Shown piece by piece: positions 7,529 through 54,352 of a stretch of DNA of 64,000 bases. Each line of letters starts with the position of its first letter. Position 1 is the stretch's first letter. Made by a program: the position numbers and the translations under genes. The DNA lies in the IMG/VR virus record IMGVR_UViG_3300042473_001265, positions 1-64,000 of that record, one strand, 5' to 3'. The notes under the pieces were generated by a model. The model made no database searches, was not told the origin of the DNA, and saw nothing but the letters and a program-made list of their open reading frames with translations.

Positions 7529-7764
7529 CAATGCAGCGTGGCTACAGTGTGTTCACTGCCGTGGCTGTACAAAATCGAACAACAGCAGTTTCCAAACGGG
7601 ACTACCAAAAATGGCGTAAAGATCACATCTTTAACGCAATAAAATTTGGTGTGGCCTACGGCGATGATTTTTGCAACCACTTCGACATTGTTGACTATAT
7701 ATTGTGTTACACGCGAGACCCTGTCAGGGCCGATGAATACATACAAAAACACTATATCAAATGA
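7525..7764 (+). CDS. Hypothetical protein
   Basis: ATGA overlaps on both sides. Confidence 0.6.
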   Translation: MTMQRGYSVFTAVAVQNRTTAVSKRDYQKWRKDHIFNAIKFGVAYGDDFCNHFDIVDYILCYTRDPVRADEYIQKHYIK

Positions 7765-8159
7765 AGATTGTATTGAATGGGACATTTGACATTGTGCATG
7801 TGGGACATCTGCGCATGTTGGCGCACGCCAGTACGCTAGGCGATCATGTGCTGGTGTGTATTGATTCGGACAGCAGAGTAAAAACGATCAAAGGCCTAGA
7901 CCGACCAATAAACTCCCAACAAGAACGCCAAGAATTGTTGCAAAGTCTTAGAGCAGTGGATCAAGTAAAAATCTTCAACACTGATCAAGACTTGATTGAT
8001 ATTTTAAAAGAGTACAACGCAGACATCATGGTCAAAGGCAGTGACTGGAAAGCTCACGGCTACATTGGACAAGAATACTGCAAACAAACAGAATGGTTTG
8101 ACAGGATCAATGGCTACTCCACAACAGAAAAAATTCAACATATTATTGCTGGGCGATGA
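7761..8159 (+). CDS. Heptose-1-phosphate adenylyltransferase-like protein (HldC/RfaE domain II)
   Basis: NGTFDIVHVGH (HxGH), KGLDRPIN..ER, VKGSDW, YSTT. Confidence 0.85.
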   Translation: MKIVLNGTFDIVHVGHLRMLAHASTLGDHVLVCIDSDSRVKTIKGLDRPINSQQERQELLQSLRAVDQVKIFNTDQDLIDILKEYNADIMVKGSDWKAHGYIGQEYCKQTEWFDRINGYSTTEKIQHIIAGR

Positions 8160-22441: not shown

Positions 22442-23151
22442 TGTTTAATCTGTCAGATAAAAAAATAGTAAGTTTTGGTGACAGTTTTGTGTTCGGATCC
22501 GAGCAACAACACAACAATGATGGGTCGTTGGGATGGATTGGCAGAGCTGCAACTAGACTAGGTGTTGCGTACAAAACATTTTCTATTCCCGGGTGTGGCA
22601 ACGATCATATTGCTCGACAGATATATTCATATGTTGCAAATAATCCGGTGGAGGACACACTGGCAGTAATTAATTGGACCTGGTGTAGCCGATGGGACTT
22701 TTACATTGGACAAGCCGAAACATGGATTACACTGGGCCCAACTTGTGTTCCGGAAAAACTAAAAGATCTTGTATCACACACGCAGGCAGAAGACATGATA
22801 GATTTTTATAAACATCGTGCTAACAGTAGTATTCTGTGGAACAAGTTTAGAAACTTACAGACCATATTTGCTGTGCAATCATATTTAAAAAGTAAAAATA
22901 TCAACAGTATACAAACATATATGGATTATATGATGTTTGACCAAGAATATGATATTCATTCTCCTGACTATGTAAAAGAATTACAAGCATTGGTCAAACC
23001 AAACTTAGAACTGTTTGAAGGTCAAAATTTTATTGACTGGAGTTATAACAAGGGATTTGAGGTTACCAAAGTTGGCCTGCATCCGCTTGAAGATGCACAT
23101 ATTGCAGCTTGTGAGTTGTGGATAGATAGATATGCACAAGCGTTGGACTAA
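22441..23151 (+). CDS. SGNH-like protein (paralog of 41141)
   Basis: FGDSFVFG, PGCGN, INWT..SR, HPLEDAH. Confidence 0.65.
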   Translation: MFNLSDKKIVSFGDSFVFGSEQQHNNDGSLGWIGRAATRLGVAYKTFSIPGCGNDHIARQIYSYVANNPVEDTLAVINWTWCSRWDFYIGQAETWITLGPTCVPEKLKDLVSHTQAEDMIDFYKHRANSSILWNKFRNLQTIFAVQSYLKSKNINSIQTYMDYMMFDQEYDIHSPDYVKELQALVKPNLELFEGQNFIDWSYNKGFEVTKVGLHPLEDAHIAACELWIDRYAQALD

Positions 23152-33822: not shown

Positions 33823-34224
33823 ATGAATCAACTTAAAAAAACAGCCTACGGGCACTATGAACTCACAGCAGCCAATGTAAAACCTCTTAGAGATTTTGTT
33901 ATTGTAGCTGACATGGATTTCTCAGAACGCAAACTATCATCTGGTCTAGTACTGTTAAATGACAATGGCACTGGATTAGGTATTCGTCCACGGTGGGGCA
34001 AGGTCTGGGCAGTAGGTCCGCAACAACAGGATGTCAAGCCCGGAGACTGGATTTGTGTGGCACACGGTCGTTGGACTCGCGGTATTGACATCGAAGACAA
34101 CGGCGTTAAAACCAGTATTCGCCGAGTTGACACTGACGACATTTTACTGGTGTCGGATGAAAAGCCCGATGACGATACCATGAGCACTGCGGAACATGTG
34201 GAATCCAAACACAGATTTGGGTGA
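33823..34224 (+). CDS. GroES-like co-chaperonin
   Basis: KPLRDFVIV...SSGLVL...GKVWAVGP...DVKPGD...DILLV. Confidence 0.8.
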   Translation: MNQLKKTAYGHYELTAANVKPLRDFVIVADMDFSERKLSSGLVLLNDNGTGLGIRPRWGKVWAVGPQQQDVKPGDWICVAHGRWTRGIDIEDNGVKTSIRRVDTDDILLVSDEKPDDDTMSTAEHVESKHRFG

Positions 34225-34226
34225 AC

Positions 34227-34703
34227 ATGATTTTTAATCACATCAAACAGCTCAAGGCCGATGGCAAAAAGATTGGCATCACCTTTTCCACCTTTGACAT
34301 GTTGCATGCAGGCCACATTGCCATGCTGTCAGAAGCCAAGAATCACTGTGACTATTTGATATGTGGCTTGCAAACTGATCCCACAATTGATCGACCTGGC
34401 ACCAAAAATGCACCCATACAAAGCATTGTGGAACGACAGATACAATTGAGTGCATGCCGCTATGTGGATGAAGTTGTAGTGTATCAAACTGAACGAGATC
34501 TTGTGGACCTGCTGTTGATTCTTCCTGTAGATGTGCGTATTCTCGGTGTCGAATACGAAGAAAAGGATTTTACTGGTCGAGATCAAGGTGCCATGCGAGG
34601 AATTGAACTGGTATTCAACGGACGAGATCATTCATTCTCCAGTTCAAGCCTGCGCAGGCGTGTGGTGGCTGCCGAAAATGAAAAAGTATTGCTGGCAAAA
34701 TAA
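34227..34703 (+). CDS. Cytidylyltransferase, TagD-like
   Basis: TFSTFDMLHAGH, CDYLICGLQTDP, ER, YVDEV, RDHSFSSS. Confidence 0.85.
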   Translation: MIFNHIKQLKADGKKIGITFSTFDMLHAGHIAMLSEAKNHCDYLICGLQTDPTIDRPGTKNAPIQSIVERQIQLSACRYVDEVVVYQTERDLVDLLLILPVDVRILGVEYEEKDFTGRDQGAMRGIELVFNGRDHSFSSSSLRRRVVAAENEKVLLAK

Positions 34704-40000: not shown

Positions 40001-40582
40001 ATGGATTTAAGCGACGAAAAAATATTCAAAGACGGTGCAGATTATTGGCAAGTGGCCGACAATATTCGCGACATTTACATGAGCGAAGGTAGCCTGTTGA
40101 CCCTGCTGGACTTTGAACGGGTACTGGACGAACTGGACATGTATGCATTTCAAAACTGGCAGATTGGCGAACTGGTTTCCGGTCCCGACATTGGCAAATA
40201 CATGGTGACTTGTGTGTTTATGTGGCCGGAAAAGCGCATGCCGGATCCGCGTGGCGCCCTTAGATTGTTGCCGTTTGATTGCACTGTAAAGTTCAAGAAA
40301 ACCACAATGAATATTCCCATGCGCATCGAAGAACCGTCGGATTACCGGCCTGGCACACACAAAGCAAGAATGATGACACAAAAAATTTGGTTGGTTGAAA
40401 TCACCATGCCAAAGAGTTTGATGAGCGATATTCGCACAGGTTCAATTGAAATGGAAGATCAAGATATTGACCTAGCAGATCTAGATGACGCCTACGAGCA
40501 GGATCTAGATCAAGAAGAATACCAAAATGACGGACAAGCACAAGATGCACAAGCAAATCTTCTCCAACAACCAGCTGTCTGA
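40001..40582 (+). CDS. Conserved late phage protein
   Basis: LLDFERVLDELDMYAF.NW..GELV.GP...MPDPRG; TAAATA at 39990. Confidence 0.7.
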   Translation: MDLSDEKIFKDGADYWQVADNIRDIYMSEGSLLTLLDFERVLDELDMYAFQNWQIGELVSGPDIGKYMVTCVFMWPEKRMPDPRGALRLLPFDCTVKFKKTTMNIPMRIEEPSDYRPGTHKARMMTQKIWLVEITMPKSLMSDIRTGSIEMEDQDIDLADLDDAYEQDLDQEEYQNDGQAQDAQANLLQQPAV

Positions 40583-41102
40583 AAGCCTCAGCTTTAAAGA
40601 CATGGAGGGCTTGATGAAGCCCACAGTTCATGTGGACGAATTCAGTTCCAAAATGGGCGACGATGATGATATCATTGTGGTCAGCTTCTTTGTGCGCGAT
40701 GCCACTGCGGCCAAGGATCTGATGGCCTGGTTCGAAAAGGGCTATGACTTTGTGTTGGATGCTGACAAAAGCCCAGGCGAAATCAAGCCCAATCGCTATC
40801 TGGTGTATGTGGAACTACGCAGACGCAGCACAGCAGGCCAGCATGTGGAAACATTGATAAAAGATCTAGACACACTGACCGAATACGAGCCAGACGACTG
40901 GACCATGCACTACAAAGGCAACTCGCAGCCGTTCAGCAGAGACGCATTTGACAACACAGTGCCACTGAGTCCCAAAGCCTACAGAGAACGCTACGAAAAG
41001 GATCTCAACGAAGTGCGTGTGGCCGCTGGCCTACACTACAAGCAGATCTACGAAACTGACGCTGAATTAAAATCCCTACAAATGGCCGCTGGCCTGCGTT
41101 AA
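40545..41102 (+). CDS. Putative virion protein
   Basis: QLSE|SL N-terminal segment; VDEFSSKMG.DDDIIVVSF. Confidence 0.65.
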   Translation: MHKQIFSNNQLSESLSFKDMEGLMKPTVHVDEFSSKMGDDDDIIVVSFFVRDATAAKDLMAWFEKGYDFVLDADKSPGEIKPNRYLVYVELRRRSTAGQHVETLIKDLDTLTEYEPDDWTMHYKGNSQPFSRDAFDNTVPLSPKAYRERYEKDLNEVRVAAGLHYKQIYETDAELKSLQMAAGLR

Positions 41103-41140: not shown

Positions 41141-41845
41141 ATGAATCTAAAAAGTTTTGGCTGTAGTTTTATCTATGGCAGTGAATTGAGTGACGAAGTT
41201 TTGTGGGATAAAACTGTTGGCCGCAACCCAAAACACAGTAAATCAACATGGCCAGCACACCTAGCACGCCATTTGAACTATAATTATTTGTGCTACGCAA
41301 GGCCAGGCGCAGGTAATTTACAAATTGCTGAACGAGCACTAACGCATTTGGCCACCAATGAACAGGCATTGTTTGTTATAAATTGGTCGTTCATTGACCG
41401 GTTTGACTATTTCATGCTAGACAATCCAAATAAATTTTATGACAATGAATGGAATGAATGGGCTACGCTTATGCCTATCGACGAAACGGATATATCAAAA
41501 ATTTATTACAAACAGTTGCATTCAGAGCTTCGTGATAAACTAACAACTTTGATGAGCGTCAAGTTAGTGGTGGACACACTTAAACAAAAAAATTGTCCAT
41601 TTATAATGACATACATGGACGACTTGATGTTTGATAAACGGTGGCATACTACTCCAGCAATAACAGATATACAAGACTATATTCGTCCGCACATGACCCA
41701 ATTTGACGGCCTGACCCTACAACAATGGAGCAAAAAAAATGGATACCCTATCACTAGTGTAGGACATCCATTGGAGCAGGCACATGCAGCAGCTGGCCAG
41801 TTAATGATTAAAGTTTTTGATACACAAAATACAAACGATCATTAG
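41141..41845 (+). CDS. SGNH-like protein (paralog of 22441)
   Basis: FGCSFIYG, PGAGN, INWS..DR, HPLEQAH. Confidence 0.65.
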   Translation: MNLKSFGCSFIYGSELSDEVLWDKTVGRNPKHSKSTWPAHLARHLNYNYLCYARPGAGNLQIAERALTHLATNEQALFVINWSFIDRFDYFMLDNPNKFYDNEWNEWATLMPIDETDISKIYYKQLHSELRDKLTTLMSVKLVVDTLKQKNCPFIMTYMDDLMFDKRWHTTPAITDIQDYIRPHMTQFDGLTLQQWSKKNGYPITSVGHPLEQAHAAAGQLMIKVFDTQNTNDH

Positions 41846-42545
41846 CATCGCGTTTGAACTCCAACAATTTTAGATTGTATTTTTCAGCAAACTCATTGGC
41901 TATTTCAAAGTTCCATGGGAATATATCCACATACGGTCCTGTTTTGTGTGTGATGCCGGGATTGGCTCTCAAGTAAAATTTGCCTGCAGGCATGAGCAAG
42001 TTCACACAGTGAGCAAATCGTGCTTCGATCTCATCCCGGCTGTTGAAATTGATAGATCCCAGTGCAATAATATGATCATGACTGCTGGGTTTGACTCGGT
42101 AATCTAAAATATCTACTTCAAAGTCCGCAGCATGATTGTACGGATCGATGCCAATTAAATTGTCAATGCGGCCCTTGAACGGATGATAACCGCAGCCCAC
42201 ATCCAGTACAGATTTGGGATTTTGCTTTTGAATTTCTTCTGCCAGCGCCCAGCCTGTATAGTCGTAGTCACCGGTGCGCGGGCGCCAAATTTCTCTAAAA
42301 AATCGATTGGTATAACGTTCACTCAGTGTGTCCACAATGCTGATCAAGGTGCCGGTGAAATCGCAATCTTCCATGGCCAGTTTTGCTTCCACAGCATCTT
42401 TGAATTTTCTGTAGCGGACTGGTGTCCATGGCAATTGATCCACTACTGTGTTTTCTGTAATGTCTGCACAAATTTTGGAGTACTTGGCTAGATTAAAGGC
42501 AATCTCTAAATTTTCTTTAATTAGATTAAAAATCTTGGTATTCAT
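41808..42545 (-). CDS. Class I SAM-dependent methyltransferase
   Basis: VLDVGCG, GIDP, LGSINF, L.P.G. Confidence 0.75.
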   Translation of the reverse strand: MNTKIFNLIKENLEIAFNLAKYSKICADITENTVVDQLPWTPVRYRKFKDAVEAKLAMEDCDFTGTLISIVDTLSERYTNRFFREIWRPRTGDYDYTGWALAEEIQKQNPKSVLDVGCGYHPFKGRIDNLIGIDPYNHAADFEVDILDYRVKPSSHDHIIALGSINFNSRDEIEARFAHCVNLLMPAGKFYLRANPGITHKTGPYVDIFPWNFEIANEFAEKYNLKLLEFKRDANDRLYFVYQKL

Positions 42546-42642
42546 TAAATTTTTCCGTTGTTTGATAAATAAAATTACAAGGAGATAAAAAATTTCTTAT
42601 CTTGCTGTAATTCATCATAACTATTTAATCAAAGGACCGATC

Positions 42643-43596
42643 ATGAAAAAATTACTAGTATCACTTCTGCTGGCCCCGCTAATGGCGGCAGCTTGGCAAC
42701 CCACCAAGCCCGTCACAGTTGTCTACCCCAATGGACCCGGTGCCGGCAATGAAATATCATTCCGTATTGTGGCTGACATTGTGGAAAGAAAGACCGGTAT
42801 CGTATTCAAGGCAGAACACCGGCCAGGTGCGGATGGCAACATTGCTATCAATCACTTTGTAACAGTGCCGCGAGACGGACATACCATTGCAGTGCCAGCT
42901 TGCCAGTCAAACTGGGTCACACCCGAAGTATGGTATCTCAACATGATCAAGTACAATCCCATGGACCTAGAACCCATTGCCAACATTGCTCGCAGTCCCT
43001 TGGCATTCTGGGCGCATCCTTCGAGCAAGATTAACACCCCTGAAGAATTTGTTGCAGCCATTCGCAATCGGCAAAAAATGTCAGTGGCTATAGGAGGTGG
43101 CGGTCACAAACTGGCAGTGGAATATCTTGTGGACAAAGTAAGTGTACCCGGCAGTGACAACCTGCAAACTATAATGTACAAAGGTCCTGCACAGGCCTTG
43201 CTAGATGTCATGGGCGGGCATGTGGAGTTTGGTGTAACTCCTGTGGCTGTGGGATACCCGCTGGTCAAAGCAGGCAAACTCAAATTCATTGGAATTGCTG
43301 ATACTCAACCACTAGCAGGATTGGAAAATATTCCACTAATGAGCAAGGCTGCACCAGGGCTCAGTATTCATGGCTGCTGGAACATGGTATTACCACCCGG
43401 TACTCCTCAAGAAATACAAACATGGTATCAAGATAATTTTGTTCCTGCTATACGATCAGCCGAAGCTGCGGCCAAGTTTCGAGAAAACATGATGTACACA
43501 ACCCCTGTTGAACATACACCGGCTGGTGTCCGTGCCAGTATGGCACGACTACAACAGACCTGGCAACCAGTTGCTCGACGGATCAAACCCGAATGA
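42643..43596 (+). CDS. Tripartite tricarboxylate transporter substrate-binding protein (Bug/TctC)
   Basis: Signal peptide; P.KPVTVV.P..PG, EHRPGADG.I, DGHT, YKG.A.AL.DVMGGHV, P.GTP. Confidence 0.88.
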   Translation: MKKLLVSLLLAPLMAAAWQPTKPVTVVYPNGPGAGNEISFRIVADIVERKTGIVFKAEHRPGADGNIAINHFVTVPRDGHTIAVPACQSNWVTPEVWYLNMIKYNPMDLEPIANIARSPLAFWAHPSSKINTPEEFVAAIRNRQKMSVAIGGGGHKLAVEYLVDKVSVPGSDNLQTIMYKGPAQALLDVMGGHVEFGVTPVAVGYPLVKAGKLKFIGIADTQPLAGLENIPLMSKAAPGLSIHGCWNMVLPPGTPQEIQTWYQDNFVPAIRSAEAAAKFRENMMYTTPVEHTPAGVRASMARLQQTWQPVARRIKPE

Positions 43597-44219
43597 AGTA
43601 TATTTTTCTAGCTGGTGCGCCGGGTTCTAAATGGAGCAGCGTGAGCAAAAACATCTACTACAGCGCCAGTATCGATCGCTCGGACTATCGTGATGAATGG
43701 ACCTATTGGCATGATGCATCGGGCCAGCGTGAACTCATGCACCTGGGAGCATACTGGGATCCTGGCATGGCATGCCCACTGCCCGAAGATCTCACTGTGT
43801 TGAGCCGTCCGCAGCTTGAAGAAAGTTTTGACTATCCGTTTGATAAAAATGCAACCGGAATACGAATTATCAAGAGCCATATCTTTTGCAACCACATTGA
43901 TTTTCTACGAGCCATATTTCCCGAATCACCCATAGTATTGGTGCAACGCAGTAATGATGCCTGCCTAGGATGGTGGGTCAAATGCGGTCATTTTAACATC
44001 ACATACCCCCGGTATGATAACTACTATGTTGATTTAAAAAACATGGCAGTACAAATCAAACAGCAGAATCACTGCATTGACCAGGTCATAGCTGATAGTC
44101 ACAATCCGCAACAGGTTTCAAACAATCAGCAATTATGCAAGACCTTGGGCATTGCACTGCCGCCAGAAGAACATTGGCAAAATTATGCAGCATCGGACAT
44201 AACAGTAACAGTAATATGA
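43593..44219 (+). CDS. Sulfotransferase-fold protein
   Basis: FLAGAPGSKWS, IIKSH, FPESPIVLVQR pattern. Confidence 0.55.
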   Translation: MKYIFLAGAPGSKWSSVSKNIYYSASIDRSDYRDEWTYWHDASGQRELMHLGAYWDPGMACPLPEDLTVLSRPQLEESFDYPFDKNATGIRIIKSHIFCNHIDFLRAIFPESPIVLVQRSNDACLGWWVKCGHFNITYPRYDNYYVDLKNMAVQIKQQNHCIDQVIADSHNPQQVSNNQQLCKTLGIALPPEEHWQNYAASDITVTVI

Positions 44220-44902
44220 AAAATCAAGCCGAATACAACAGCAGTTGGCAATGGTGTGTTGACCACAGCAATTATCACTTTGACAATCGTCGAGTTGAAA
44301 AAACTGGCGAATGGTTTCAAGTGCTGGGACGCTTTGTAGGTAATTGGACAGACGAAGTACAGCAGGCACAAGGCCAGCCCATTACCTGGGCCACTCGTAA
44401 ATTCTACAGTAATGATGATGACACAGTTAGTCCCATGTTGGCACAGGAGCAAAACGATTTGCGCGACACAGGTGCACCAGTTGATCTGCAATTGACCGAT
44501 GCAGTATTTGACATCAGTGCATTTCCCACACTGACAAAGATGAGCAATTATTTTGGAATAGAAGATCCCAAAATTCGCATGCACTTTCAGCAGCCGGGTC
44601 AAATGTTTAATTTGCATATTGACAAGTTGCAAGAACGCTGTCCCGACAATCCCGAGCGTGTTATCCGTATGAGTGTTATGCTGACAGATTGGGAACCCGG
44701 ACAGTTTTACTTGTATGGTACAACAACCTACTCAAGATGGCGAGCAGGCGATGTGCATGTGTTTGACTGGGCCAATGTTCCGCATGCCACTGCCAATGCC
44801 AGTCGCAGTATGCGTCCAGTATTGCAAGTTACCGGACTCAAAACAGACAAGACTCGAGAAATGTTCAAATTAGCAGGACCACTGGTAACATATCCAGTAT
44901 GA
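44216..44902 (+). CDS. 2OG-Fe(II)/cupin oxygenase-like protein
   Basis: QQPGQMFNLHID...W.AGDV..FDW..VPHATAN....R. Confidence 0.65.
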   Translation: MKNQAEYNSSWQWCVDHSNYHFDNRRVEKTGEWFQVLGRFVGNWTDEVQQAQGQPITWATRKFYSNDDDTVSPMLAQEQNDLRDTGAPVDLQLTDAVFDISAFPTLTKMSNYFGIEDPKIRMHFQQPGQMFNLHIDKLQERCPDNPERVIRMSVMLTDWEPGQFYLYGTTTYSRWRAGDVHVFDWANVPHATANASRSMRPVLQVTGLKTDKTREMFKLAGPLVTYPV

Positions 44903-44927
44903 AAAGACAATTATCAAAGGAGTTAAC

Positions 44928-45782
44928 ATGACACAACGCATATTAGTAATGGGCTTACCAGGTTCGGGCAAAACATTCTTTGCAACCGCACTTAAAAAAT
45001 ATTTAGAAGAAAATTCTAATACACTTACTATGCCAGTGAGTCGTATGGTAAATTTAGAACACCCACCATTGACATACACTAGCAAAGTTGACTGGTTCAA
45101 CGCAGACGAAATTCGCAAACAATACAACGACTGGGACTTCAGTCGCGAAGGCCGTATTAGACAAAGTATTAGAATGTTTGATTTTGCTGTGCGATGTTCC
45201 GGAGACTTTGTAATCTGTGACTTTGTGGCACCGCTGGTGGAGATGAGGAACAACTTCAAAGCTGACTGGACCATATGGATGGACACTATTGATGCTGGCC
45301 GGTTTGAAGATACTAATAAGGCATTTGTTCCACCTGAACAGTACGATTTTAGAATCACAGAACAACATGCTGAAAAATGGGCAGAGTTTGTAGGCGATCA
45401 CATTTTGTATAATCGTAGGAGACCGCGGTTTGACTGGCAACGAGAAACGGTGCAGATGCTGGGCCGCTGGCAACCGTGGCATGCCGGGCATCGAGCCCTG
45501 TTTGAAAGACTAATTGCTCGAACAGGACAGGTTGTTATTCAAGTGCGTGATGTGCAAGGTTGGCAAGGATCTAATCCGTTTGCAATCGAACAGGTCAAGA
45601 ATTTTATACGGCGTGATCTAGATCCATTGTTCCAAGGACAATATGAAATACAAGTGGTGCCCAACATTGTACACATTGGCTGGGGCCGCGGAGTAGGCTA
45701 CACATCAGGTGAAGAAACATTTGACGAAACAGTAACCAGCATCAGCGCTACAAATATCAGAAAAAGTATGGGACTGTCGTGA
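44928..45782 (+). CDS. APS kinase (CysC)-like domain fused to an HxGH nucleotidyltransferase domain
   Basis: GLPGSGKT, DFSREGRIRQ, FVAP, F.PPE; C-terminal LGRWQPWHAGH...NPF...ISAT.IR. Confidence 0.75.
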   Translation: MTQRILVMGLPGSGKTFFATALKKYLEENSNTLTMPVSRMVNLEHPPLTYTSKVDWFNADEIRKQYNDWDFSREGRIRQSIRMFDFAVRCSGDFVICDFVAPLVEMRNNFKADWTIWMDTIDAGRFEDTNKAFVPPEQYDFRITEQHAEKWAEFVGDHILYNRRRPRFDWQRETVQMLGRWQPWHAGHRALFERLIARTGQVVIQVRDVQGWQGSNPFAIEQVKNFIRRDLDPLFQGQYEIQVVPNIVHIGWGRGVGYTSGEETFDETVTSISATNIRKSMGLS

Positions 45783-46216
45783 TTCGATATTTAAATCTTC
45801 CTGCTATCCCTGTTGATATCATGTCTCGGTTAAATCGAGACTTTGGTCAATATAAAACAAAGGCCAATCCATTGAATAAAGTCTATGTGTGGAGTGACGA
45901 TTTTAACGAAGAAGTTAACCGCTGGTGTCAACAAAATATATGCGACACTATGTATTGGGGGTTTCAGATCATGACTGGAGATCAACCAATGCACAAAGAT
46001 AATGTCACACTGACCAAGTTAATTTACTTGATCAACACAGGCGGCGACAATGTTTACACTAGATTTTATGATGATGACAAAAATCTCACACACAGTTATA
46101 AAATTGAATGCAATCGTTGGCATTTGCTCAAAGCAGACAGCTATCACAGTGTTGACGGTGTTGAGTCAGGGCAGACGAGATTCAGTCTGACTGGCAGAAT
46201 ATTCCCGGAAGCATAA
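45779..46216 (+). CDS. Small 2OG-Fe(II)/cupin-like protein
   Basis: HKD...YHSV....R.S. Confidence 0.55.
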   Translation: MIRYLNLPAIPVDIMSRLNRDFGQYKTKANPLNKVYVWSDDFNEEVNRWCQQNICDTMYWGFQIMTGDQPMHKDNVTLTKLIYLINTGGDNVYTRFYDDDKNLTHSYKIECNRWHLLKADSYHSVDGVESGQTRFSLTGRIFPEA

Positions 46217-46264
46217 CCGCAATTGTGTTAAATAACTGAGATACACTATTAGAAAGAGCTTATT

Positions 46265-46432
46265 ATGTCGGAAAACAAACCAACTTTTATACAGGCAATC
46301 AAAGCAGCACAGGCAATTAAAACCAAAATTTCACCTGAAACTGCTGCAACTATACAGCAAACAAAGAAAACACCCAAGTCACAGGTCACCACCAACAAGC
46401 CCACCACAAGAACTACAGGGCGCGGCAGATAA
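46265..46432 (+). CDS. Small basic protein (55 aa)
   Basis: Read manually: MSENKPTFIQAIKAAQ...TTGRGR; TAAATA at 46229. Confidence 0.6.
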   Translation: MSENKPTFIQAIKAAQAIKTKISPETAATIQQTKKTPKSQVTTNKPTTRTTGRGR

Positions 46433-46559
46433 GCTGCTAAATAAACTTAACACGGCCCAAGCCTCTGCGGACTGATCATCCTGGCACGCTTGGGTTTTTC
46501 TACGACTGCACATTTTTGTTGCCTGGATAAATACCAGTATCTAACAAGGTGTCAACACT

Positions 46560-47174
46560 ATGCAAATCAGCACTGCACAACTGCAACAAATCATACCCAG
46601 CAATCCATATGTTTCGCAATGGACCGAAGCACTAAACAAAATCTTACCCGACTACGGCATAGATACTCCGCAGCGAGTCAGCGGATTCTTAGCACAATGC
46701 GCCCATGAAAGTGCAGGGTTTACTGCGCTGAGTGAAAATTTAAACTATCGCAAAGAATCTCTACGCCGTGTTTTTGCCAAATATTTCACCAGTGATTCAG
46801 TGGCCGAACAGTATGCACACAAAGAATCCATGATTGCCAACCGTGTGTATGCCAACAGAATGGGCAATGGTGACGAAGCATCTGGTGACGGATATCGCTA
46901 TTGCGGTCGTGGCCTAATTCAGCTCACAGGCAAAGACAACTATCAAGCATTTGCCGAAAGTGTAGAAATGGCTGTGGAAGATGTGCCAGCATATCTGGCC
47001 ACATTTGAAGGTGCAGTGCAAAGTGCCTGTTGGTTCTGGGAAACAAATAATCTAAACCAATGGGCTGACAAGGGCGATATTGTTACACTGACCAAACGCA
47101 TCAACGGCGGCACCATTGGTCTAGAAGATCGCATCAAGCACTACGAACACGCACTGCATGTACTAGGACTATAA
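46560..47174 (+). CDS. Endolysin, glycoside hydrolase family 19
   Basis: FLAQCAHES.GF..L.ENLNY, RMGNG...GDG.RY.GRGLIQLTGK.NY, TKRINGG..GL..R. Confidence 0.92.
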   Translation: MQISTAQLQQIIPSNPYVSQWTEALNKILPDYGIDTPQRVSGFLAQCAHESAGFTALSENLNYRKESLRRVFAKYFTSDSVAEQYAHKESMIANRVYANRMGNGDEASGDGYRYCGRGLIQLTGKDNYQAFAESVEMAVEDVPAYLATFEGAVQSACWFWETNNLNQWADKGDIVTLTKRINGGTIGLEDRIKHYEHALHVLGL

Positions 47175-47175
47175 C

Positions 47176-47658
47176 ATGTGGTTACTGCATTTCTTTTCAG
47201 ACAGTTTTTTACAGTTCGTAGTCAATGCAGTATTAATAACTGGCGCCGTTAGCACAGTTTTATTCTGTTTCTTTCTCAATAAGATTTTACAATTTTTTCC
47301 GCCATTGGCGCCATACTACAAAGCATTGCAAATTGGCAGTATAGTTGTGCTGTTGGCTGGCGTGTACTTTAAAGGTGGCTACACTACTGAAATGATCTGG
47401 CGTGACAAGGTAAAAGAAGTAGAAGCCAAGTTAGCTGCGGCCGAAGCTGAAAGCAAAAAAGAAACTGTAAAAATTGTAGAACGAGTTGTCAAGAAAACCG
47501 AAGTTGTTCAGCGGCGTGGTCAAGATGTTGTTCAATATATTGATCGAGAAGTTGTCAAGTATGATACAAAATTTTTACCTGGTGGTGTATGTGAAATACC
47601 TAAAGAATTTGTCAAAGCACACAATGACTCTGCTACTCCGGTTGAGGCAAAGAAATGA
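47176..47658 (+). CDS. Putative inner-membrane spanin (Rz-like)
   Basis: TM helices, coiled coil and C-terminal Cys; follows the endolysin. Confidence 0.6.
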   Translation: MWLLHFFSDSFLQFVVNAVLITGAVSTVLFCFFLNKILQFFPPLAPYYKALQIGSIVVLLAGVYFKGGYTTEMIWRDKVKEVEAKLAAAEAESKKETVKIVERVVKKTEVVQRRGQDVVQYIDREVVKYDTKFLPGGVCEIPKEFVKAHNDSATPVEAKK

Positions 47659-48812: not shown

Positions 48813-49601
48813 ATGGATCACTACAAAACACTTGATGTTGCCCGTACTGCCACTCCGGATGAAATAAAAAAAGCCTATCGCAAGCTGGCTTCTCAGCATC
48901 ATCCCGACAAAGGTGGCAACACTGCCAAGTTTCAAGAACTACAAACTGCTTACGACACCCTAAGCGATCCTGCCAAACGACAGCAATACGATAACCCTAG
49001 GCCCAATTTTGGACAACACCCGCATCCGGGCGGACAACAGTTTGACTTTGACACTATATTTGATGTGTTTGGCACTAGGTTTACTCAGAGCACTAGGCAG
49101 CGACCACAAACAGTCATCAGCAGAGTAGGACTGACCATCAGTCTAACTGACGTGGCCACTGGTGGCAAACGCACCATTGGGCTGGGCCACGGGCAAGCCA
49201 ACACTATCGAAATAGACATACCCGCAGGTATCAATCAAGGCGATAGTGTGCAGTACAAAGGCATTGCTCCGGGTGGTGGAGATTTGATAATAACATTCAG
49301 CGTTCGCGACGATCCCAAATGGCAACGGCAAGGAGCAAATTTACATACCGAACAGTTGGTGAATATTTGGGATCTGATTGTGGGTGGTGAATCTGTGGTC
49401 CGGGACCTGTTCAACGAAGAGATAACCATTCTAATACCGCGGGGCACACAGCCCGGTAGTAGATTACGGTTAAGGGGTCGTGGACTGCCCAGCAAAACTG
49501 GCCCAGGCGATATAATTGTGCAGGTACAGGCTGTTATTCCCGATCACATACCCGAAGATTTGTTAAATATGATAGAACAAAAACGAACAACTGTTGGTTG
49601 A
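48813..49601 (+). CDS. DnaJ/CbpA-type co-chaperone without zinc finger
   Basis: J domain with HPD; C-terminal IP.GTQPG..LRLRGRG. Confidence 0.9.
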
Positions 49602-49655: not shown

Positions 49656-51929
49656 ATGCAAAATAATCCAGAAATCGATGCTGTAGTCAACAACGCCACT
49701 GCCATTGCTGTGGGACACAAACACGGATATGTGCTGACAGAACATGTGCTGCTGGCCATGGTACAGTATCCATCGTTCCGCAAAATACTAGAAAAATACG
49801 GAACACCAGTTGAACAACTAGAATCTGAATTGCACAACTACCTGCAGAGTCAAACCAGCCTGTTGACAGACCGCACAGATCCCCCACGCAAAACCAATGC
49901 ACTGGAGCGAGTGTTTAATCGGGCGCTGACACAGGTACTGTTCACGGGCCGTAGAACAATTACCTTGTTGGACTTGTATTTGGCCATGATGTCTGAAACC
50001 AACAGCCATGCACATTACTACTTGTTGAAGTATAATGTTCGCAAAACAGAATTTGCTGAATTCTTCCAAAAGAATTACAACATCACTGATGTGGAATTGA
50101 CCAGCGCCAAGGCCGACGAAATTCTTGAAGAACACTGTGTCAATTTGAGTCGCAGAGCAGCCGAAGGTCAACTTGAACCCATGATTGGGCGCACAGCCGA
50201 ACTGGAAGAAATGATCACTGTGCTGGCCCGCAAGTTCAAGGCCAATGTGCTGATGGTGGGCGATCCGGGTGTGGGCAAAACTGCCATCATTGACGGACTG
50301 GCACAAGAAATTCATGCTGGCTCTGTGCCAGAGTTTCTCAAAGGTGCAGAAGTTTGGGGACTGGAAATTGGATCCCTGTTGGCTGGCAGCAAGTATCGCG
50401 GCGAGTTTGAAGAAAAGTTCAAAGATGTTATCACAGCATTGAAAACCAAGAAGAACTGTGTGCTGTTCATTGACGAAGCACACACCATGATGGGTGCGGG
50501 TGCCAGTGGATCCAGCAGTCTGGACTTTGCCAACATGATCAAACCGGCCATCACCAGTGGCAACTTGAAAGTGATTGCCAGTACCACCTGGGAAGAATAC
50601 TACGAATCATTCGAGCGTGATCGTGCGCTAATGCGCCGTTTTCACAGAGTCACCATTGGTGAGCCGGATGCTGCCACCACTGAGCAGATCCTGATTGGCA
50701 TCAGCCCTAGACTGGAATCATTCCACAATGTGATGATTGACACAGACGCCATGTGTGCAGCAGTGGAACTGAGTGGACGCTACATACACGATCGTAAGAA
50801 TCCTGACAAGTCAATTGATCTGCTGGACGGTGCCTGTGCTGCACAGCGAGTGTTGGATCAAGGCACAGTCACAGTGAACAAACACATGATCATGGCACAG
50901 GTCAGCCGTGTGACCAGTATTCCACTGGACCGCTTGCAAAACGAACGCAGTATCAAAATTACCGAACTTGAAAGCAATGTCAAACAATTCCTGTACGGGC
51001 AGGATGCAGCAATTGACACTGTGCTGGAACGAGTGTACATCAACTTCTCTGGCATTGGCAATCCCAAAAAGCCGGTGGCCAGCTTTTTGTTCCTGGGTCC
51101 AACTGGCACAGGCAAAACAGAATTGGCCAAGCTGCTGGCAGAGAATCTTGACATGCACCTGCTGAAATATGACATGAGCGAGTTTCAGGAAAAGCACAGC
51201 ATTGCCAGCTTGATTGGTGCACCGCCGGGCTATGTGGGCTTTGATGACGGCAATGTGGGCGGCGGCAAATTGATCAGTGACATATCCAAGAACCCATTCA
51301 GTGTGCTGCTGTTTGATGAAATTGAAAAGGCACATCCTGACGTGGTCAACATCATGTTGCAGATGCTGGACGAAGCCAAAATTACTGGCAGCAGTGGCAA
51401 ATCAGTTGATGTTAAAAACTGCATCATCATCATGACCAGTAATTTAGGTGCCAGAGACAATGAAAACAACAACATTGGCTTTGGCAAATCGTTGGAAAAA
51501 TACGGCGAAGAAGATCGTGCAATGAAAGACTTCTTCAAGCCGGAACTGCGTAACCGCATTGATGCTGTGTGCAAGTTCAACAAGTTGGATCCATTGGCCA
51601 TCAAGAAAGTTGTGGTCAAGTTCACACGAGAACTACAGCAGAGCCTGTACGCCAAGAACATCAAGCTGATGTTTGATGAAAGTGTTATCAACATGCTGTC
51701 GGAAAAAGGATACGATCCCAAGATGGGTGCTAGACCGCTGAGTCGCAAGATTGACGAACTGATTCGTGTTCCGCTCAGCAAGCGCATACTGTTTGATCAG
51801 ATCAAAGACTGTTCTATATTGGCCATCATGGTTGCTGACGAGCTGATGTTTGTGACCAAACCGCTGACTGGTCCCCTGCCAATTGTGGACGGAAAAGGAT
51901 ATATTTTACTCGATGCCCCTGCTGTCTGA
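49656..51929 (+). CDS. clpA: ClpA-like AAA+ unfoldase
   Basis: Clp N domain, GDPGVGKT, GPTGTGKT, DMSEF.EKH, IGF loop; no ClpB middle domain. Confidence 0.88.
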   Translation: MQNNPEIDAVVNNATAIAVGHKHGYVLTEHVLLAMVQYPSFRKILEKYGTPVEQLESELHNYLQSQTSLLTDRTDPPRKTNALERVFNRALTQVLFTGRRTITLLDLYLAMMSETNSHAHYYLLKYNVRKTEFAEFFQKNYNITDVELTSAKADEILEEHCVNLSRRAAEGQLEPMIGRTAELEEMITVLARKFKANVLMVGDPGVGKTAIIDGLAQEIHAGSVPEFLKGAEVWGLEIGSLLAGSKYRGEFEEKFKDVITALKTKKNCVLFIDEAHTMMGAGASGSSSLDFANMIKPAITSGNLKVIASTTWEEYYESFERDRALMRRFHRVTIGEPDAATTEQILIGISPRLESFHNVMIDTDAMCAAVELSGRYIHDRKNPDKSIDLLDGACAAQRVLDQGTVTVNKHMIMAQVSRVTSIPLDRLQNERSIKITELESNVKQFLYGQDAAIDTVLERVYINFSGIGNPKKPVASFLFLGPTGTGKTELAKLLAENLDMHLLKYDMSEFQEKHSIASLIGAPPGYVGFDDGNVGGGKLISDISKNPFSVLLFDEIEKAHPDVVNIMLQMLDEAKITGSSGKSVDVKNCIIIMTSNLGARDNENNNIGFGKSLEKYGEEDRAMKDFFKPELRNRIDAVCKFNKLDPLAIKKVVVKFTRELQQSLYAKNIKLMFDESVINMLSEKGYDPKMGARPLSRKIDELIRVPLSKRILFDQIKDCSILAIMVADELMFVTKPLTGPLPIVDGKGYILLDAPAV

Positions 51930-53575: not shown

Positions 53576-54352
53576 ATGAATTATCTTGTAATCTACCCTG
53601 GTCGTTTTCATCCATTTCACCGCGGTCATATGGCCAGTTATGATTGGCTGACTAAAAAGTTTGGAGAAAATAGCGTGTATATTGCCACCAGCAATGTGCA
53701 GGCACCCATCACCAGTCCGTTCAATTACAGTGACAAAGTGATGATGATGACCAAGTTGGGTGTTCCGGCTAGCCACATTGCCAATGTGAAGAATCCTTAT
53801 CAAGCAACAGAAATCACTGGTAATCTGTCCGACGACGAAAAAAACAAAACAGCATTGGTATTTGCAGTCAGTGCCAAAGACGCTGAACGCTTCAACTTTG
53901 CTCCAAAAAAAGACGGCACGCCAGGTTATTTGCAACCACTGCCCAAGACTGGCAAAGGCGTAAAGCCCATGACCAAACACGGTTATGTGGCCATCACTCC
54001 CACCATCAACTTCCAAGTAAACGGAGTAGATGCCAACAGTGCCAGTGAAATACGCAGCATGTATATCAAAGGCAATGACCATGACAAGGATCAGGTCATT
54101 GCTGATCTGTACGGACAACCAGATCCGGCAATTCGAGCAATGTTTGATAAAAAGTTAGGCATTGGTGAGCAGATACAACAGCAGATCAACGAAGCACGCC
54201 GCAGTGTTGGCGCTGGCAGACAGTTTGGTAAAACTCAGCTTGCAGAATGGATGCAAAATGTGTTACAATTAGAAAAACAAGCAAACAGTATTGATCTTGA
54301 TTTTTCCCACATCAACCCAGATTATATAGACGAAAAAACTTATAATCGTTAA
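53576..54352 (+). CDS. HxGH nucleotidyltransferase-like late protein
   Basis: YPGRFHPFHRGH, SPF, SASEIR; TAAATA at 53563. Confidence 0.75.
   Translation: MNYLVIYPGRFHPFHRGHMASYDWLTKKFGENSVYIATSNVQAPITSPFNYSDKVMMMTKLGVPASHIANVKNPYQATEITGNLSDDEKNKTALVFAVSAKDAERFNFAPKKDGTPGYLQPLPKTGKGVKPMTKHGYVAITPTINFQVNGVDANSASEIRSMYIKGNDHDKDQVIADLYGQPDPAIRAMFDKKLGIGEQIQQQINEARRSVGAGRQFGKTQLAEWMQNVLQLEKQANSIDLDFSHINPDYIDEKTYNR

What the first reader, a model, noticed from the sequence alone, without database searches (positions are those of the whole stretch)
41808..46216. Possible phage-encoded sulfation/modification pathway
A Bug/TctC binding protein, a sulfotransferase-fold protein, a 2OG-Fe(II)-like oxygenase, a CysC-like kinase fused to an HxGH nucleotidyltransferase and a second oxygenase lie in one run, with a divergent SAM methyltransferase. 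Established: ATP sulfurylase (HxxH superfamily) plus APS kinase produce PAPS, the sulfotransferase donor. Inference: the fusion is a minimal PAPS synthase, and the cluster hydroxylates, sulfates or methylates a surface glycan, virion protein or small molecule. No TctA/TctB membrane partners are present, so Bug must use host partners or act as a sensor.
Basis: partly seen in the sequence, partly recalled or inferred. Interest (0 to 1): 0.65.

Follow-up and report, generated by a model that had tools for sequence, protein, structure and literature searches.

The report
Phage sulfation module with minimal PAPS synthase
A 340-kb freshwater jumbo phage carries a conserved gene run (periplasmic binding protein, sulfotransferase-like enzyme, iron/2-oxoglutarate oxygenase) beside a two-domain enzyme that most likely makes the sulfate donor PAPS with a tiny, previously unrecognised sulfate-activating domain, which also occurs in marine bacteria that lack the usual enzyme.

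Summary
The gene run exists as described, in a 340,172-bp virus record. TctC/Bug is solid (Pfam 3e-24). The 208-aa protein has a sulfotransferase fold (pLDDT 91; tyrosylprotein sulfotransferases Z 11.1). The 228-aa protein (true start 44216) keeps an invariant HxD...H...R oxygenase motif. The 284-aa fusion is an APS-kinase-like domain (Z 16.9) plus a roughly 113-aa HxGH nucleotidyltransferase.

By sequence that small domain is closest to archaeal NMN adenylyltransferase, not to ATP sulfurylase. The same domain is fused to canonical CysC in marine bacteria. It is overlapped by an APS-kinase-like gene in more than 20 Marinimicrobia and other genomes. It lies within 10 kb of a sulfotransferase gene in 24 of 34 cellular loci. 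It occurs in genomes where canonical ATP sulfurylase and CysD were not found (16 of 17 genomes).

Corrections:
- The conserved core is MTase-like | TctC–sulfotransferase-like–oxygenase (72–78 of 80 related loci).
- The fusion is adjacent in only 31 of 80 loci.
- The second oxygenase is unique to this genome.
- This genome does encode TctA, 70 kb away.

The acceptor and the role of TctC are unknown. Nothing has been tested biochemically.

The parts
41141..41845 (+). 234-aa DUF6071/SGNH-like protein (N-terminal FGCSFIYGSE motif); upstream neighbour, variably conserved
   Evidence: Pfam DUF6071 at 1.9e-4, below the cut-off. Homologue present in 22 of 80 related loci. A paralogue lies at 22465-23124.
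41808..42545 (-). 245-aa methyltransferase-like protein, divergently transcribed; the most conserved gene of the module
   Evidence: VLDVGCGYHPF motif. Only marginal hits: Methyltransf_23 at 0.098, and a profile search against solved SAM-MTases at 0.36-0.39. Present in 72 of 80 related loci at 53-79% identity.
42546..42642 (.). AT-rich 97-bp divergent intergenic region between the MTase-like gene and tctC; presumed regulatory
   Evidence: Sequence read. The sigma-70 and terminator scans did not exceed chance.
42643..43596 (+). 317-aa periplasmic TctC/Bug-family solute-binding protein with signal peptide
   Evidence: PF03401 at 3.2e-24. Nearest solved relatives TphC and Bug27 at 2e-21. Present in 73 of 80 related loci.
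43593..44219 (+). 208-aa minimal sulfotransferase-fold protein (ST208). Invariant motifs: GAPGSKWSS, RIIKSH, R119..D122, GWWVKCGHF
   Evidence: AF2 pLDDT 91.4. VIA: TPST1/2 Z 11.1 and 10.6, OLS-ST 9.7, Stf1 9.2. Sulfotransfer_3 hit in 27 of 35 family members. Atlas look-alike clusters carry Sulfotransfer_3. 3450 metagenomic homologues.
44216..44902 (+). 228-aa Fe(II)/2-oxoglutarate oxygenase-like protein (Oxy228), translationally coupled to ST208
   Evidence: Invariant H134-x-D136, H190 and R200 in 31 homologues. Atlas look-alike carries Asp_Arg_Hydrox, 0.96. Immediately downstream of ST208 in 78 of 80 loci. A paralogue at about 319 kb of the genome matches at hhalign 97.5%.
44928..45419 (+). 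Fusion protein, residues 1-164: APS-kinase-like P-loop domain. Walker A GLPGSGKT; D60, R63, F71 and R76 conserved; shortened lid; 25-aa insert at residues 30-55
   Evidence: VIA: M. tuberculosis CysC Z 16.9, rmsd 1.9, 25% identity. Family profile against solved APS kinases 1.4e-15. PF01583 hit in 41 of 44 family members.
45438..45782 (+). Fusion protein, residues 171-284: minimal HxGH nucleotidyltransferase ('mini-NT'; GRWQPWHAGH ... GRGVGY ... ISATNIR). Proposed sulfate adenylyltransferase
   Evidence: VIA: PPAT Z 10.3, NMNATs Z 9.6. Family profile against M. jannaschii NMNAT 9.7e-12. 45% identical to the N-domain of NT-CysC proteins. Invariant residues in alignment A4.
45779..46216 (+). 145-aa small 2OG-Fe(II) oxygenase-like protein (Oxy145); a variable accessory gene, not part of the conserved module
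   Evidence: 2OG-FeII_Oxy_3 at 0.002, below the cut-off. Found in 1 of 80 related loci. A paralogue lies next to TctA at about 116.7 kb.

Best explanation
The region is a phage-borne sulfation module that sits in a variable 'moron' site between virion genes and the lysis cassette of a freshwater jumbo phage.

Proposed mechanism (inferred):
- The 284-aa fusion acts as a compact PAPS synthase. Its C-terminal mini-nucleotidyltransferase, about 113 aa, adenylylates sulfate (ATP + sulfate -> APS + PPi).
- The physically coupled APS-kinase-like N-domain phosphorylates the 3'-OH of APS to give PAPS, which pulls the unfavourable first step forward.
- The 208-aa sulfotransferase-fold protein uses PAPS to sulfate an acceptor.
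- The translationally coupled Fe(II)/2OG oxygenase probably hydroxylates that acceptor first.
- The co-transcribed periplasmic TctC-type binding protein most likely brings in a carboxylate: either the acceptor or precursor, or a co-substrate. It would do this through host TctAB, or in this genome through the phage's own TctA.

Shown: the folds and families of the parts, their conservation and synteny, and the recurrent linkage of the mini-NT to APS kinases and sulfotransferases.

Inferred: sulfurylase activity, the order of the reactions, the acceptor, and the ligand of TctC.
For: 1. Kinase domain. APS kinases are the best structural and sequence relatives (Z 16.9; 1.4e-15). The APS-contacting positions D60, R63, F71 and R76 are conserved.

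2. Rosetta stone. The same mini-NT (45% identity, E 6e-34) is fused to a canonical CysC that passes the TIGR00455 cut-off (233.6 bits against 138.7). This holds for 177 protein clusters, including OCS116 and PS1 bacteria.

3. Split form. In Marinimicrobia, Flavobacteriales, a marine group III archaeon and others, a 112-118-aa mini-NT gene is overlapped by an upstream APS-kinase-like gene of about 150 aa (PF01583 1.9e-18). The kinase is fused or adjacent in 30 of 34 loci.

4. Neighbourhood. Sulfotransfer_5 lies within 9 kb in 22 of 34 loci, at varying distance and orientation, inside capsule-type loci. Sulfotransfer_1 lies near the two Verrucomicrobiota loci.

5. Missing enzyme. Of 17 such genomes only 1 has PF01747, and only 1 has a strong CysD/CysH-type hit. 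The set includes a record of about 0.97 Mb titled 'chromosome 1'.

6. In the phage lineage ST208, Oxy228 and the fusion are all core genes. The fusion is present in 4 of 4 near-complete relatives and lies within 10 kb of ST208 in 31 of 80 loci.

7. ST208 has a sulfotransferase fold and Sulfotransfer_3 signals.

8. The phage genomes encode no Sat and no CysD/CysH.
Against: - No biochemical data exist.
- The mini-NT is not detectably related to ATP sulfurylase beyond the superfamily HxxH motif. There is no PF01747 hit, and hhalign against a real Sat gives 2.4%. Its closest sequence relatives are NMNATs.
- The phage kinase domain lacks the first Asp of the DGD motif and much of the lid. It fails the TIGR00455 cut-off (17.5 against 138.7).
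- The fusion is not adjacent to ST208 in most related loci. In other relatives it is translationally coupled to a carbamoyltransferase in a radical-SAM and sugar gene cluster.
- Sano-like phages carry the fusion without any recognised sulfotransferase nearby.
- One singleton protein fuses the kinase to a sugar-1-phosphate nucleotidyltransferase instead.
- Most of the cellular genomes are incomplete SAGs or MAGs, so absence of Sat or CysD is not proven.
- The ST208 phosphate-binding loop (P-G-S-K-W-S) differs from the canonical sulfotransferase loop, and the conserved 3'-phosphate-binding Ser is not evident.
Confidence: 0.55

Rival explanations
1. Only the kinase half is sulfur-related. It phosphorylates APS made by the host's own CysDN or Sat, supplying PAPS to the phage sulfotransferase. 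The mini-NT domain has another role: regulatory nucleotide binding, oligomerisation, or an unrelated adenylylation.
For: The kinase domain is clearly of APS-kinase type. The mini-NT shows no specific similarity to Sat. Most bacteria can make APS, so a phage would not strictly need a sulfurylase.
Against: The mini-NT is fused to or overlapped by an APS kinase in 30 of 34 cellular loci. It occurs in genomes where no Sat or CysD was found, and those genomes would then have no source of APS. Its catalytic HxGH and ISATxIR motifs, plus a GRxxGY loop, are invariant, which argues for a working active site.
Confidence: 0.17
2. Kinase-first activation of a non-sulfur substrate. The P-loop domain phosphorylates a sugar, hydroxy-acid or other alcohol, and the mini-NT couples the product to AMP or CMP (the logic of HldE, NadR or RibF). 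This would feed the phage's extensive sugar and glycan modification genes and would be unrelated to ST208.
For: - In many relatives the fusion follows a carbamoyltransferase within a radical-SAM, DegT and epimerase cluster.
- One protein fuses the same kinase type to a PF00483 sugar-1-phosphate nucleotidyltransferase inside a sugar-nucleotide locus.
- Gluconate and shikimate kinases are the next structural neighbours (Z 13.9 and 12.0).
- The cellular gene pairs lie in capsule loci.
- The genome has four other cytidylyltransferase-like genes.
Against: A canonical CysC, an equivalog-level match, replaces the divergent kinase in 177 clusters, and a sugar-kinase model has no use for it. The residues that bind adenine and phosphosulfate in APS kinases are conserved. 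The PF00483 fusion is a single contig.
Confidence: 0.12
3. NAD-related enzyme. The C-domain is an NMN adenylyltransferase, and the kinase is a ribosylnicotinamide kinase or an NAD-kinase analogue (a NadR-like arrangement). The enzyme would rebuild NAD(P) during infection.
For: The best sequence relatives of the C-domain are archaeal and NadM-type NMNATs, with the shared GRFQPFHxGH motif. In Salvovirus phages the gene follows a COG3236/NADAR-type gene.
Against: - Only the N-terminal, ATP-binding part of NMNAT is matched: positions 3-82 of chains 168-181 residues long. The TIGR01527 score is 21.4 against a cut-off of 181.2.
- The domain is about 113 aa long, so the rest of an NMNAT is absent.
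- The genome has no NAMPT or NAPRTase.
- The constant partner is an APS kinase, and the neighbours are sulfotransferases, not NAD genes.
Confidence: 0.06
4. There is no pathway. The genes are independent accessory 'morons' collected at a recombination hot spot between the structural and lysis modules, and their adjacency has no functional meaning.
For: The site is highly variable among relatives, which carry GATase, DctP, carbonic anhydrase, DUF2061 and unknown genes there. The fusion moves between two genomic sites, and Oxy145 is unique to this genome.
Against: TctC-ST208-Oxy228 keep their order, usually with overlapping or abutting ends, in 73-78 of 80 loci despite 38-68% protein divergence. 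A sulfotransferase-like gene and an Oxy228 paralogue recur together at a second locus of the genome.
Confidence: 0.1

Closest known systems
Bifunctional PAPS synthase (metazoan PAPSS1/2; also Sat-CysC fusions of Aquifex, Thiobacillus and fungi)
   Same: An APS-kinase-type domain is joined to an HxxH-superfamily adenylyltransferase domain. The domain order (kinase N-terminal, transferase C-terminal) is that of human PAPSS1, which aligned over both domains (251 residues, Z 15.7, though with rmsd 20). The proposed product is the same.
   Different: The transferase domain is about 113 aa instead of about 390. It has no PUA-like domain, no PF01747 signal, and GRxVGY in place of the GRDHAG loop seen in a real Sat. 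The kinase lid is shortened. Activity is untested.
Archaeal/NadM-type NMN adenylyltransferase (M. jannaschii MJ0541, M. thermautotrophicum NMNAT, Francisella NadM)
   Same: The GR(F/W)QP(F/W)HxGH and IS(A/G)TxIR motifs are shared. These are the best sequence matches of the C-domain (9.7e-12 to 1e-9; Z 9.6, 20% identity).
   Different: Only the first 70-80 residues or so of NMNAT are matched. The score is far below the equivalog cut-off. The genomic partners are APS kinases and sulfotransferases.
Adenylyl-sulfate kinase CysC (PF01583, TIGR00455)
   Same: Fold (Z 16.9, rmsd 1.9 over 129 residues); Walker A; the second Asp and the Arg of the DGDxxR motif; the FS...R...Q and (F/V)xP motifs.
   Different: The first Asp of DGD is not conserved, the lid is about 17 residues shorter, and there is a 25-aa insert. 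The protein passes the Pfam cut-off (24.0 against 21.1) but not TIGR00455.
Sulfotransferases of the Sulfotransfer_3 / TPST type, including phage-encoded Sulfotransfer_3 proteins of cyanophages and OM43 phages (PMC10580990, which states that their function in phages is unclear)
   Same: Fold; a K-x-H motif on a central strand; an Arg after the next strand; sub-threshold Sulfotransfer_3 matches across the family.
   Different: The protein is only 208 aa, has an unusual phosphate-binding loop (P-G-S-K-W-S), lacks the C-terminal GxxGxxK region, and has no significant HMM hit for the window protein itself.
Tripartite tricarboxylate transporter (TctABC) and Bug-family binding proteins; phage-encoded binding proteins such as cyanophage PstS (from general knowledge)
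   Same: A TctC-family periplasmic binding protein, and in this genome a full-length TctA permease.
   Different: The system is phage-encoded. TctC and TctA lie 70 kb apart, no TctB was recognised, and TctA is absent from five related phage genomes. The ligand is unknown.

Membership tests
APS kinase (CysC; PF01583 / TIGR00455) | HMM score above the curated cut-off | tested here: inconclusive
   PF01583: 24.0 bits against a cut-off of 21.1 for the window protein, and 41 of 44 family members hit (best 2.5e-18). TIGR00455: 17.5 bits against 138.7, not met.
APS kinase (CysC; PF01583 / TIGR00455) | P-loop kinase fold closest to solved APS kinases | tested here: met
   VIA Z 16.9, 16.6 and 15.7 for CysC structures; the next family is gluconate kinase at 13.9. 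Foldseek top hits are all APS kinases.
APS kinase (CysC; PF01583 / TIGR00455) | Catalytic and APS-binding motifs (Walker A; DGDxxR; GFS; DRxENxRR; FISP; lid KGLY...FTG) | tested here: inconclusive
   Walker A, D60, R63, F71, R76, Q79 and the DFVxP motif are conserved. The first Asp of DGD is not conserved and the lid is shortened. The assignment of roles to these residues comes from general knowledge.
ATP sulfurylase (Sat; PF01747) | Family HMM or profile similarity | tested here: not met
   No PF01747 match in the genome at E <= 1. hhalign of the mini-NT family against a real Sat gives probability 2.4%, aligning the HxxH region only. The family profile matched solved Sat-CysC fusions through their kinase domains only.
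ATP sulfurylase (Sat; PF01747) | Motifs QxRNPxHxxH, GRDHAG, SGTxxR; PUA-like N-domain | tested here: inconclusive
   A real Sat (L162) shows QTRNPMHRAH, VGRDHAG and LSGTKVR. The mini-NT has GRWQPWHxGH, an invariant GRxVGY and ISATxIR in the same order. It has no PUA-like domain. The motif resemblance was not confirmed by structural superposition.
Archaeal NMN adenylyltransferase (TIGR01527 / NF002243) | Full-length match above the cut-off, including the NMN-binding part | tested here: not met
   21.4 bits against 181.2 and 22.7 against 127. Only model positions 4-71 of 167 are matched. The domain is about 113 aa.
Cytidylyltransferase-like HxGH superfamily (PF01467) | HxGH and ISxTxxR motifs, Rossmann-like fold | tested here: met
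   37 of 44 family members hit PF01467, best 1.5e-7. VIA: PPAT Z 10.3, NMNATs Z 9.6. The motifs are invariant.
Sulfotransferase (PF13469 and relatives) | Sulfotransferase fold | tested here: met
   The seven best VIA matches are sulfotransferases (Z 11.1 to 8.4), against 8.3 or less for kinases. Foldseek alone was ambiguous.
Sulfotransferase (PF13469 and relatives) | HMM score above the gathering cut-off | tested here: not met
   14.2 bits against 27 for the window protein. 27 of 35 relatives give sub-threshold hits, best 7.7e-5. hhalign against single Sulfotransfer_1 and Sulfotransfer_5 proteins found nothing.
Sulfotransferase (PF13469 and relatives) | PAPS-binding 5'-PSB loop, 3'-PB Arg/Ser, catalytic base | tested here: inconclusive
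   GAPGSKWSS, K94-S-H96 and R119 are invariant, but the loop is non-canonical and no Ser sits at R+8. The equivalences were drawn from motifs recalled from the SULT and TPST literature, not from a residue-level superposition.
TTT solute-binding protein (TctC/Bug; PF03401) | Family HMM, periplasmic targeting, membrane partner | tested here: met
   86.3 bits against 27. A signal-peptide-like N-terminus is visible in the sequence. TctA is present in the genome. TctB was not searched for.
Fe(II)/2-oxoglutarate oxygenase | HxD/E...H facial triad plus a 2OG-binding Arg; family HMM | tested here: inconclusive
Oxy145: 19.4 bits against 27.
Class I SAM methyltransferase | Family HMM or solved relative; motif I | tested here: inconclusive
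   The motif VLDVGCGY is present. The best hits are 0.098 (Pfam) and 0.36-0.39 (profile against solved MTases).

The most novel reading that the evidence does not exclude
The HxGH domain of about 113 aa is a third, unrecognised class of sulfate adenylyltransferase, an NMNAT-like 'mini ATP sulfurylase'. It always works coupled to an APS kinase. It supplies PAPS for sulfotransferases in jumbo phages and in streamlined marine lineages (Marinimicrobia, OCS116, PS1, a marine group III archaeon) that lack Sat and CysDN.
Probability: 0.5. Interest if true: 0.85.

Novelty: new variant of a known kind. Interest (0 to 1): 0.74.

Why it matters
Sulfate activation is thought to rest on two enzyme types: homo-oligomeric Sat and GTP-driven CysDN. 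If the mini-domain is a sulfurylase, it would have three consequences.
- It would be the smallest known sulfate-activating enzyme.
- It would explain how abundant, genome-streamlined marine bacteria that appear to lack the sulfate-activation step can still make PAPS for sulfated capsules.
- It would correct the present annotations of these genes ('kinase', 'adenylyl-sulfate kinase', 'CysN/CysC', 'hypothetical').

For phage biology, it would show that a very abundant group of freshwater jumbo phages brings a self-contained sulfation pathway, together with a periplasmic binding protein, into its host. The fusion has more than 7,900 protein clusters in metagenomes. The role of phage sulfotransferases is an open question in the literature (PMC10580990), and this would give a concrete handle on it.

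The key claim can be tested directly with one recombinant protein and radiolabelled sulfate.

Tried and rejected
- Nucleotide search of the phage collection: no match.
- DNA-hypermodification reading. It was prompted by a P-loop kinase lying near radical-SAM, carbamoyltransferase, ThyA-like, DHFR and dCMP deaminase genes in relatives. It was dropped because the kinase is specifically APS-kinase-like and recurs in cellular capsule loci.
- CoA-synthase-like reading (PPAT plus dephospho-CoA kinase logic; PPAT is the top structural hit of the C-domain at Z 10.3). No sequence support: PPATs are absent from the profile hits at E < 0.01, apart from one marginal NCBIfam row for P0382.
- ADP-heptose (HldE-like) reading, based on an adjacent PfkB kinase in some Marinimicrobia loci. 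That adjacency is not conserved, whereas the adjacency of the APS-kinase-like gene is.
- NAD salvage: see the rival explanations.
- The 208-aa gene on the minus strand of L004 is not an ST208 homologue.
- The 229-aa protein at the second locus is not demonstrably related to ST208 (hhalign 0.4%).
- Profile searches of the ST208, Oxy228 and MTase-like families against solved structures found nothing significant by sequence. The weak AtsK match of Oxy228 (E 0.3) reflects only the generic distal-His strand motif.
- The promoter and terminator scan was at chance level.
- The genome search could not reach the ENA contigs or draw relatives of a virus.
- DUF2061, which is fused to the mini-NT in P0324 and encoded next to the fusion in some relatives, gave no useful literature.

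Full report
**Setting.** The window is the first 64 kb of a single 340,172-bp virus record that CheckV rates 98% complete. The region lies between virion genes (40527-41102, phrog_13138) and the lysis cassette: a GH19 endolysin at 46560-47174 and a spanin-like gene at 47176. No cultured phage matches at the DNA level. Metagenomes from stratified freshwater lakes hold thousands of close relatives, and IMG/VR holds several genomes of 338-374 kb of the same group.

**The observation.** The ORFs are real and tightly packed.
- *42643-43596* is a TctC/Bug-family binding protein (PF03401, 3.2e-24) with a signal-peptide-like N-terminus. Its nearest solved relatives are the terephthalate-binding protein and Bug27, at 2e-21.
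- *43593-44219 (ST208)* overlaps the TctC stop codon. With 34 homologues it folds confidently (pLDDT 91.4). An exhaustive structural comparison puts tyrosylprotein sulfotransferases first (Z 11.1 and 10.6; 165 residues aligned; rmsd 3.3-3.4). Five more sulfotransferases follow before the first kinase, at Z 8.3. Foldseek alone was ambiguous. 27 of 35 family members give sub-threshold Sulfotransfer_3 hits and no other family recurs. Protein-language-model look-alikes include viral clusters that carry Sulfotransfer_3.
- *The next gene starts at 44216*, not 44135, with an ATGA overlap. It has no Pfam hit, but H134-x-D136, H190 and R200 are invariant in 31 homologues of 32-75% identity. This is the signature of Fe(II)/2OG oxygenases.
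- *45779-46216* is only weakly oxygenase-like (0.002).
- *The divergent 41808-42545 gene* has a methyltransferase motif I but no significant family or structure match.

**The fusion protein (44928-45782).** The model (pLDDT 90.7) has two domains.
- *Residues 1-164* match APS kinases best: M. tuberculosis CysC at Z 16.9, rmsd 1.9 and 25% identity, with gluconate kinase next at 13.9. The family profile hits solved APS kinases at 1.4e-15. In the family alignment K15, R63 and F71 are invariant, and D60, R76 and Q79 nearly so. These align with the DGDxxR, GFS and DRxEN positions of CysC. The lid is shorter, and the first Asp of DGD is not kept.
- *Residues 171-284* form a minimal HxGH nucleotidyltransferase. 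Structural matches are PPAT at Z 10.3 and NMNATs at Z 9.6. Sequence profiles point to archaeal NMNATs (9.7e-12) but cover only their N-terminal 70-80 residues or so.
- There is no signal for the ATP-sulfurylase family. Solved Sat-CysC fusions were matched through their kinase domains only.

**Evidence from elsewhere changes that.** The representative search found variant architectures.
- *Fusion to canonical CysC.* P0382 (311 aa) carries the same small domain at its N-terminus (45% identity over 114 residues, E 6e-34). It is followed by a canonical CysC that passes the equivalog-domain cut-off (TIGR00455, 233.6 against 138.7 bits). This architecture forms 177 clusters, many from Tara Oceans. 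It occurs in OCS116, PS1 and gammaproteobacterial genomes in cellular contexts.
- *Split form.* In more than 20 Marinimicrobia genomes, and in Flavobacteriales, a marine group III archaeon and others, the domain is a free-standing gene of 112-118 aa. Its start is overlapped by an upstream APS-kinase-like gene of about 150 aa (PF01583, 1.9e-18). In Verrucomicrobiota the two are fused in the phage's order.
- *Counts over 34 cellular loci.* A kinase is fused or adjacent in 30. A Sulfotransfer_5 gene (1.6e-48), paired with a class IV aminotransferase, lies within 9 kb in 22, at changing distance and orientation, in loci with Wzi, glycosyltransferases and epimerases. A Sulfotransfer_1 gene lies near the two Verrucomicrobiota loci.
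- *Missing enzyme.* Of 17 of these genomes, one has a canonical ATP sulfurylase, and only the verrucomicrobial one has strong CysD/CysH-type hits. A Fidelibacterota record of about 0.97 Mb titled 'chromosome 1' has neither. Organisms that encode an APS-kinase-like enzyme and a sulfotransferase need a source of APS. The gene that always travels with the kinase is the obvious candidate.
- *Thermodynamics.* From established enzymology, sulfate adenylylation is strongly unfavourable and is normally pulled forward by an APS kinase. The obligatory coupling seen here fits that.

**Motifs.** A genuine Sat fetched from one of these genomes shows QTRNPMHRAH, VGRDHAG and LSGTKVR. The mini-domain family has an invariant GRxQPxHxGH, an invariant G-R-x-x-G-Y (mostly GRDVGY; GRGVGY in the window) and ISATxIR, in the same order. 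Profile comparison does not support family membership (2.4%). The proposal is therefore 'works like', not 'is a member of'.

**Synteny in the phage lineage.** Among 80 IMG/VR loci that carry an ST208 homologue:
- Oxy228 follows immediately in 78.
- TctC precedes in 73.
- The MTase-like gene lies divergently upstream in 72.
- The fusion lies within 10 kb in 31.
- Oxy145 appears only in the window's own duplicate record.

The fusion is present in all four near-complete relatives tested, but about 70 kb from ST208 in two of them. In those lineages it follows, with overlapping ends, a carbamoyltransferase gene beside radical-SAM, DegT, epimerase, dCMP deaminase, ThyA-like and DHFR genes. In the window's genome that cluster lies at about 125-143 kb.

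So the fixed unit is MTase-like | TctC-ST208-Oxy228. The PAPS-synthase candidate is a core gene of the phage group that is often, but not always, parked next to it. The site itself is a hot spot: relatives carry glutamine amidotransferase-like genes, a DctP binding protein, a carbonic anhydrase and DUF2061 there.

**TctC and its partner.** It is flanked by a PP-loop-motif protein, a 273-aa protein with a signal peptide, and a paralogue of Oxy145. Five related genomes lack TctA, so in most of the lineage TctC must rely on host TctAB or act alone. Its ligand cannot be inferred; its solved relatives bind aromatic or aliphatic carboxylates.

**A second locus.** A second locus (genome about 316.4-319.5 kb) holds a GDSL-like gene, a 417-aa protein with a weak Sulfotransfer_1 phosphate-loop match (0.05; 'TPDRVGST'), and a clear Oxy228 paralogue (hhalign 97.5%). 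This hints that sulfotransferase-like and Oxy228-like proteins work as pairs.

**What the genome lacks.** It has no Sat, no CysD/CysH, no CysQ-type phosphatase and no NAMPT.

**Conclusion.** The most economical reading is a phage sulfation module.
- The fusion makes PAPS. The kinase step is well supported; the sulfurylase step is inferred from fusions, neighbourhoods and missing-enzyme patterns.
- ST208 transfers the sulfate.
- Oxy228 prepares or further modifies the acceptor.
- TctC links the module to uptake of a carboxylate.

The acceptor (envelope glycan, protein or peptide, or small molecule) is open. I put 0.55 on this reading. The main alternatives are that the mini-domain does something other than activate sulfate (0.17), or that the kinase and transferase pair activates a non-sulfur substrate for glycan synthesis (0.12). 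No paper in the searchable library describes such a sulfurylase or this fusion. One paper notes that the role of phage sulfotransferases is unclear (PMC10580990).

**Limits.** Most of the cellular genomes are incomplete.

Noticed in passing
outside the window: genome G000 112969-117198 (locus L030): A phage-encoded full-length TctA permease (441 aa; PF01970 4e-50). It is preceded by a 378-aa protein with a PP-loop SGGTDS motif. It is followed by a 273-aa protein with a signal peptide and no family hit, and then by a paralogue of the 145-aa oxygenase-like gene. TctA is absent from five related jumbo-phage genomes.
   Followed up: partly
outside the window: genome G000 316365-319592 (locus L119): A second possible sulfotransferase and oxygenase locus. 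It holds a GDSL-like gene, a 417-aa protein with a weak Sulfotransfer_1 phosphate-loop match ('TPDRVGST', E 0.05), a 229-aa unknown, and a 170-aa paralogue of Oxy228 (hhalign 97.5%).
   Followed up: partly
window 7761-8159, 34221-34703, 53576-54352; genome 258483-259343: Four further cytidylyltransferase-like (PF01467) genes. One (53576-54352) has a GRFHPFHRGH NMNAT-type motif. One at 258 kb appears fused to a cupin-like C-terminus. Together they suggest extensive nucleotide-activated sugar or cofactor chemistry in this phage.
   Followed up: partly
outside the window: genome G000 about 125000-143000 (minus strand); loci L002 and L004: A cluster of three or four radical-SAM/SPASM genes, a NodU/CmcH-type carbamoyltransferase, dCMP deaminase, DegT aminotransferases, a sugar epimerase/dehydratase, a ThyA-like gene and DHFR. 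In several relatives the kinase-NT fusion sits inside this cluster, overlapping the end of the carbamoyltransferase gene.
   Followed up: partly
loci L013, L021-L026 (site equivalent to window 41800-46500): The site between the module and the endolysin is a hot spot. Relatives carry class I glutamine amidotransferase/peptidase C26-like genes next to TctC, a second binding protein of the DctP (TRAP) family, a carbonic anhydrase, and small DUF2061 membrane proteins. DUF2061 is also found fused to the mini-NT in P0324.
   Followed up: no
loci L133-L160 (Marinimicrobia, Flavobacteriales and others): A class IV aminotransferase gene and a Sulfotransfer_5 gene always travel as a pair in capsule-type loci near the kinase and mini-NT pair. 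A plant paper in the library mentions Sulfotransfer_5 in a study of BCAT (branched-chain aminotransferase) genes (PMC13725701, seen only in the search listing).
   Followed up: no
window 48813-49601 and 49656-51929: ORFs of 262 and 757 aa have the same lengths and positions as genes carrying DnaJ and ClpB/AAA domains in the near-identical relatives L007 and L010. The phage therefore probably encodes its own DnaJ- and ClpB-type chaperones. A PhoH-like gene lies upstream in relatives.
   Followed up: no
window 44928-45782, residues 30-55: The kinase domain of this phage group has a 25-residue insert after the Walker A helix (pLDDT 65-70). It is absent from most family members, which are 250-270 aa long.
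   Followed up: no
window 22465-23124: A paralogue (32% identity over 240 residues) of the DUF6071/SGNH-like gene at 41141-41845.
   Followed up: no
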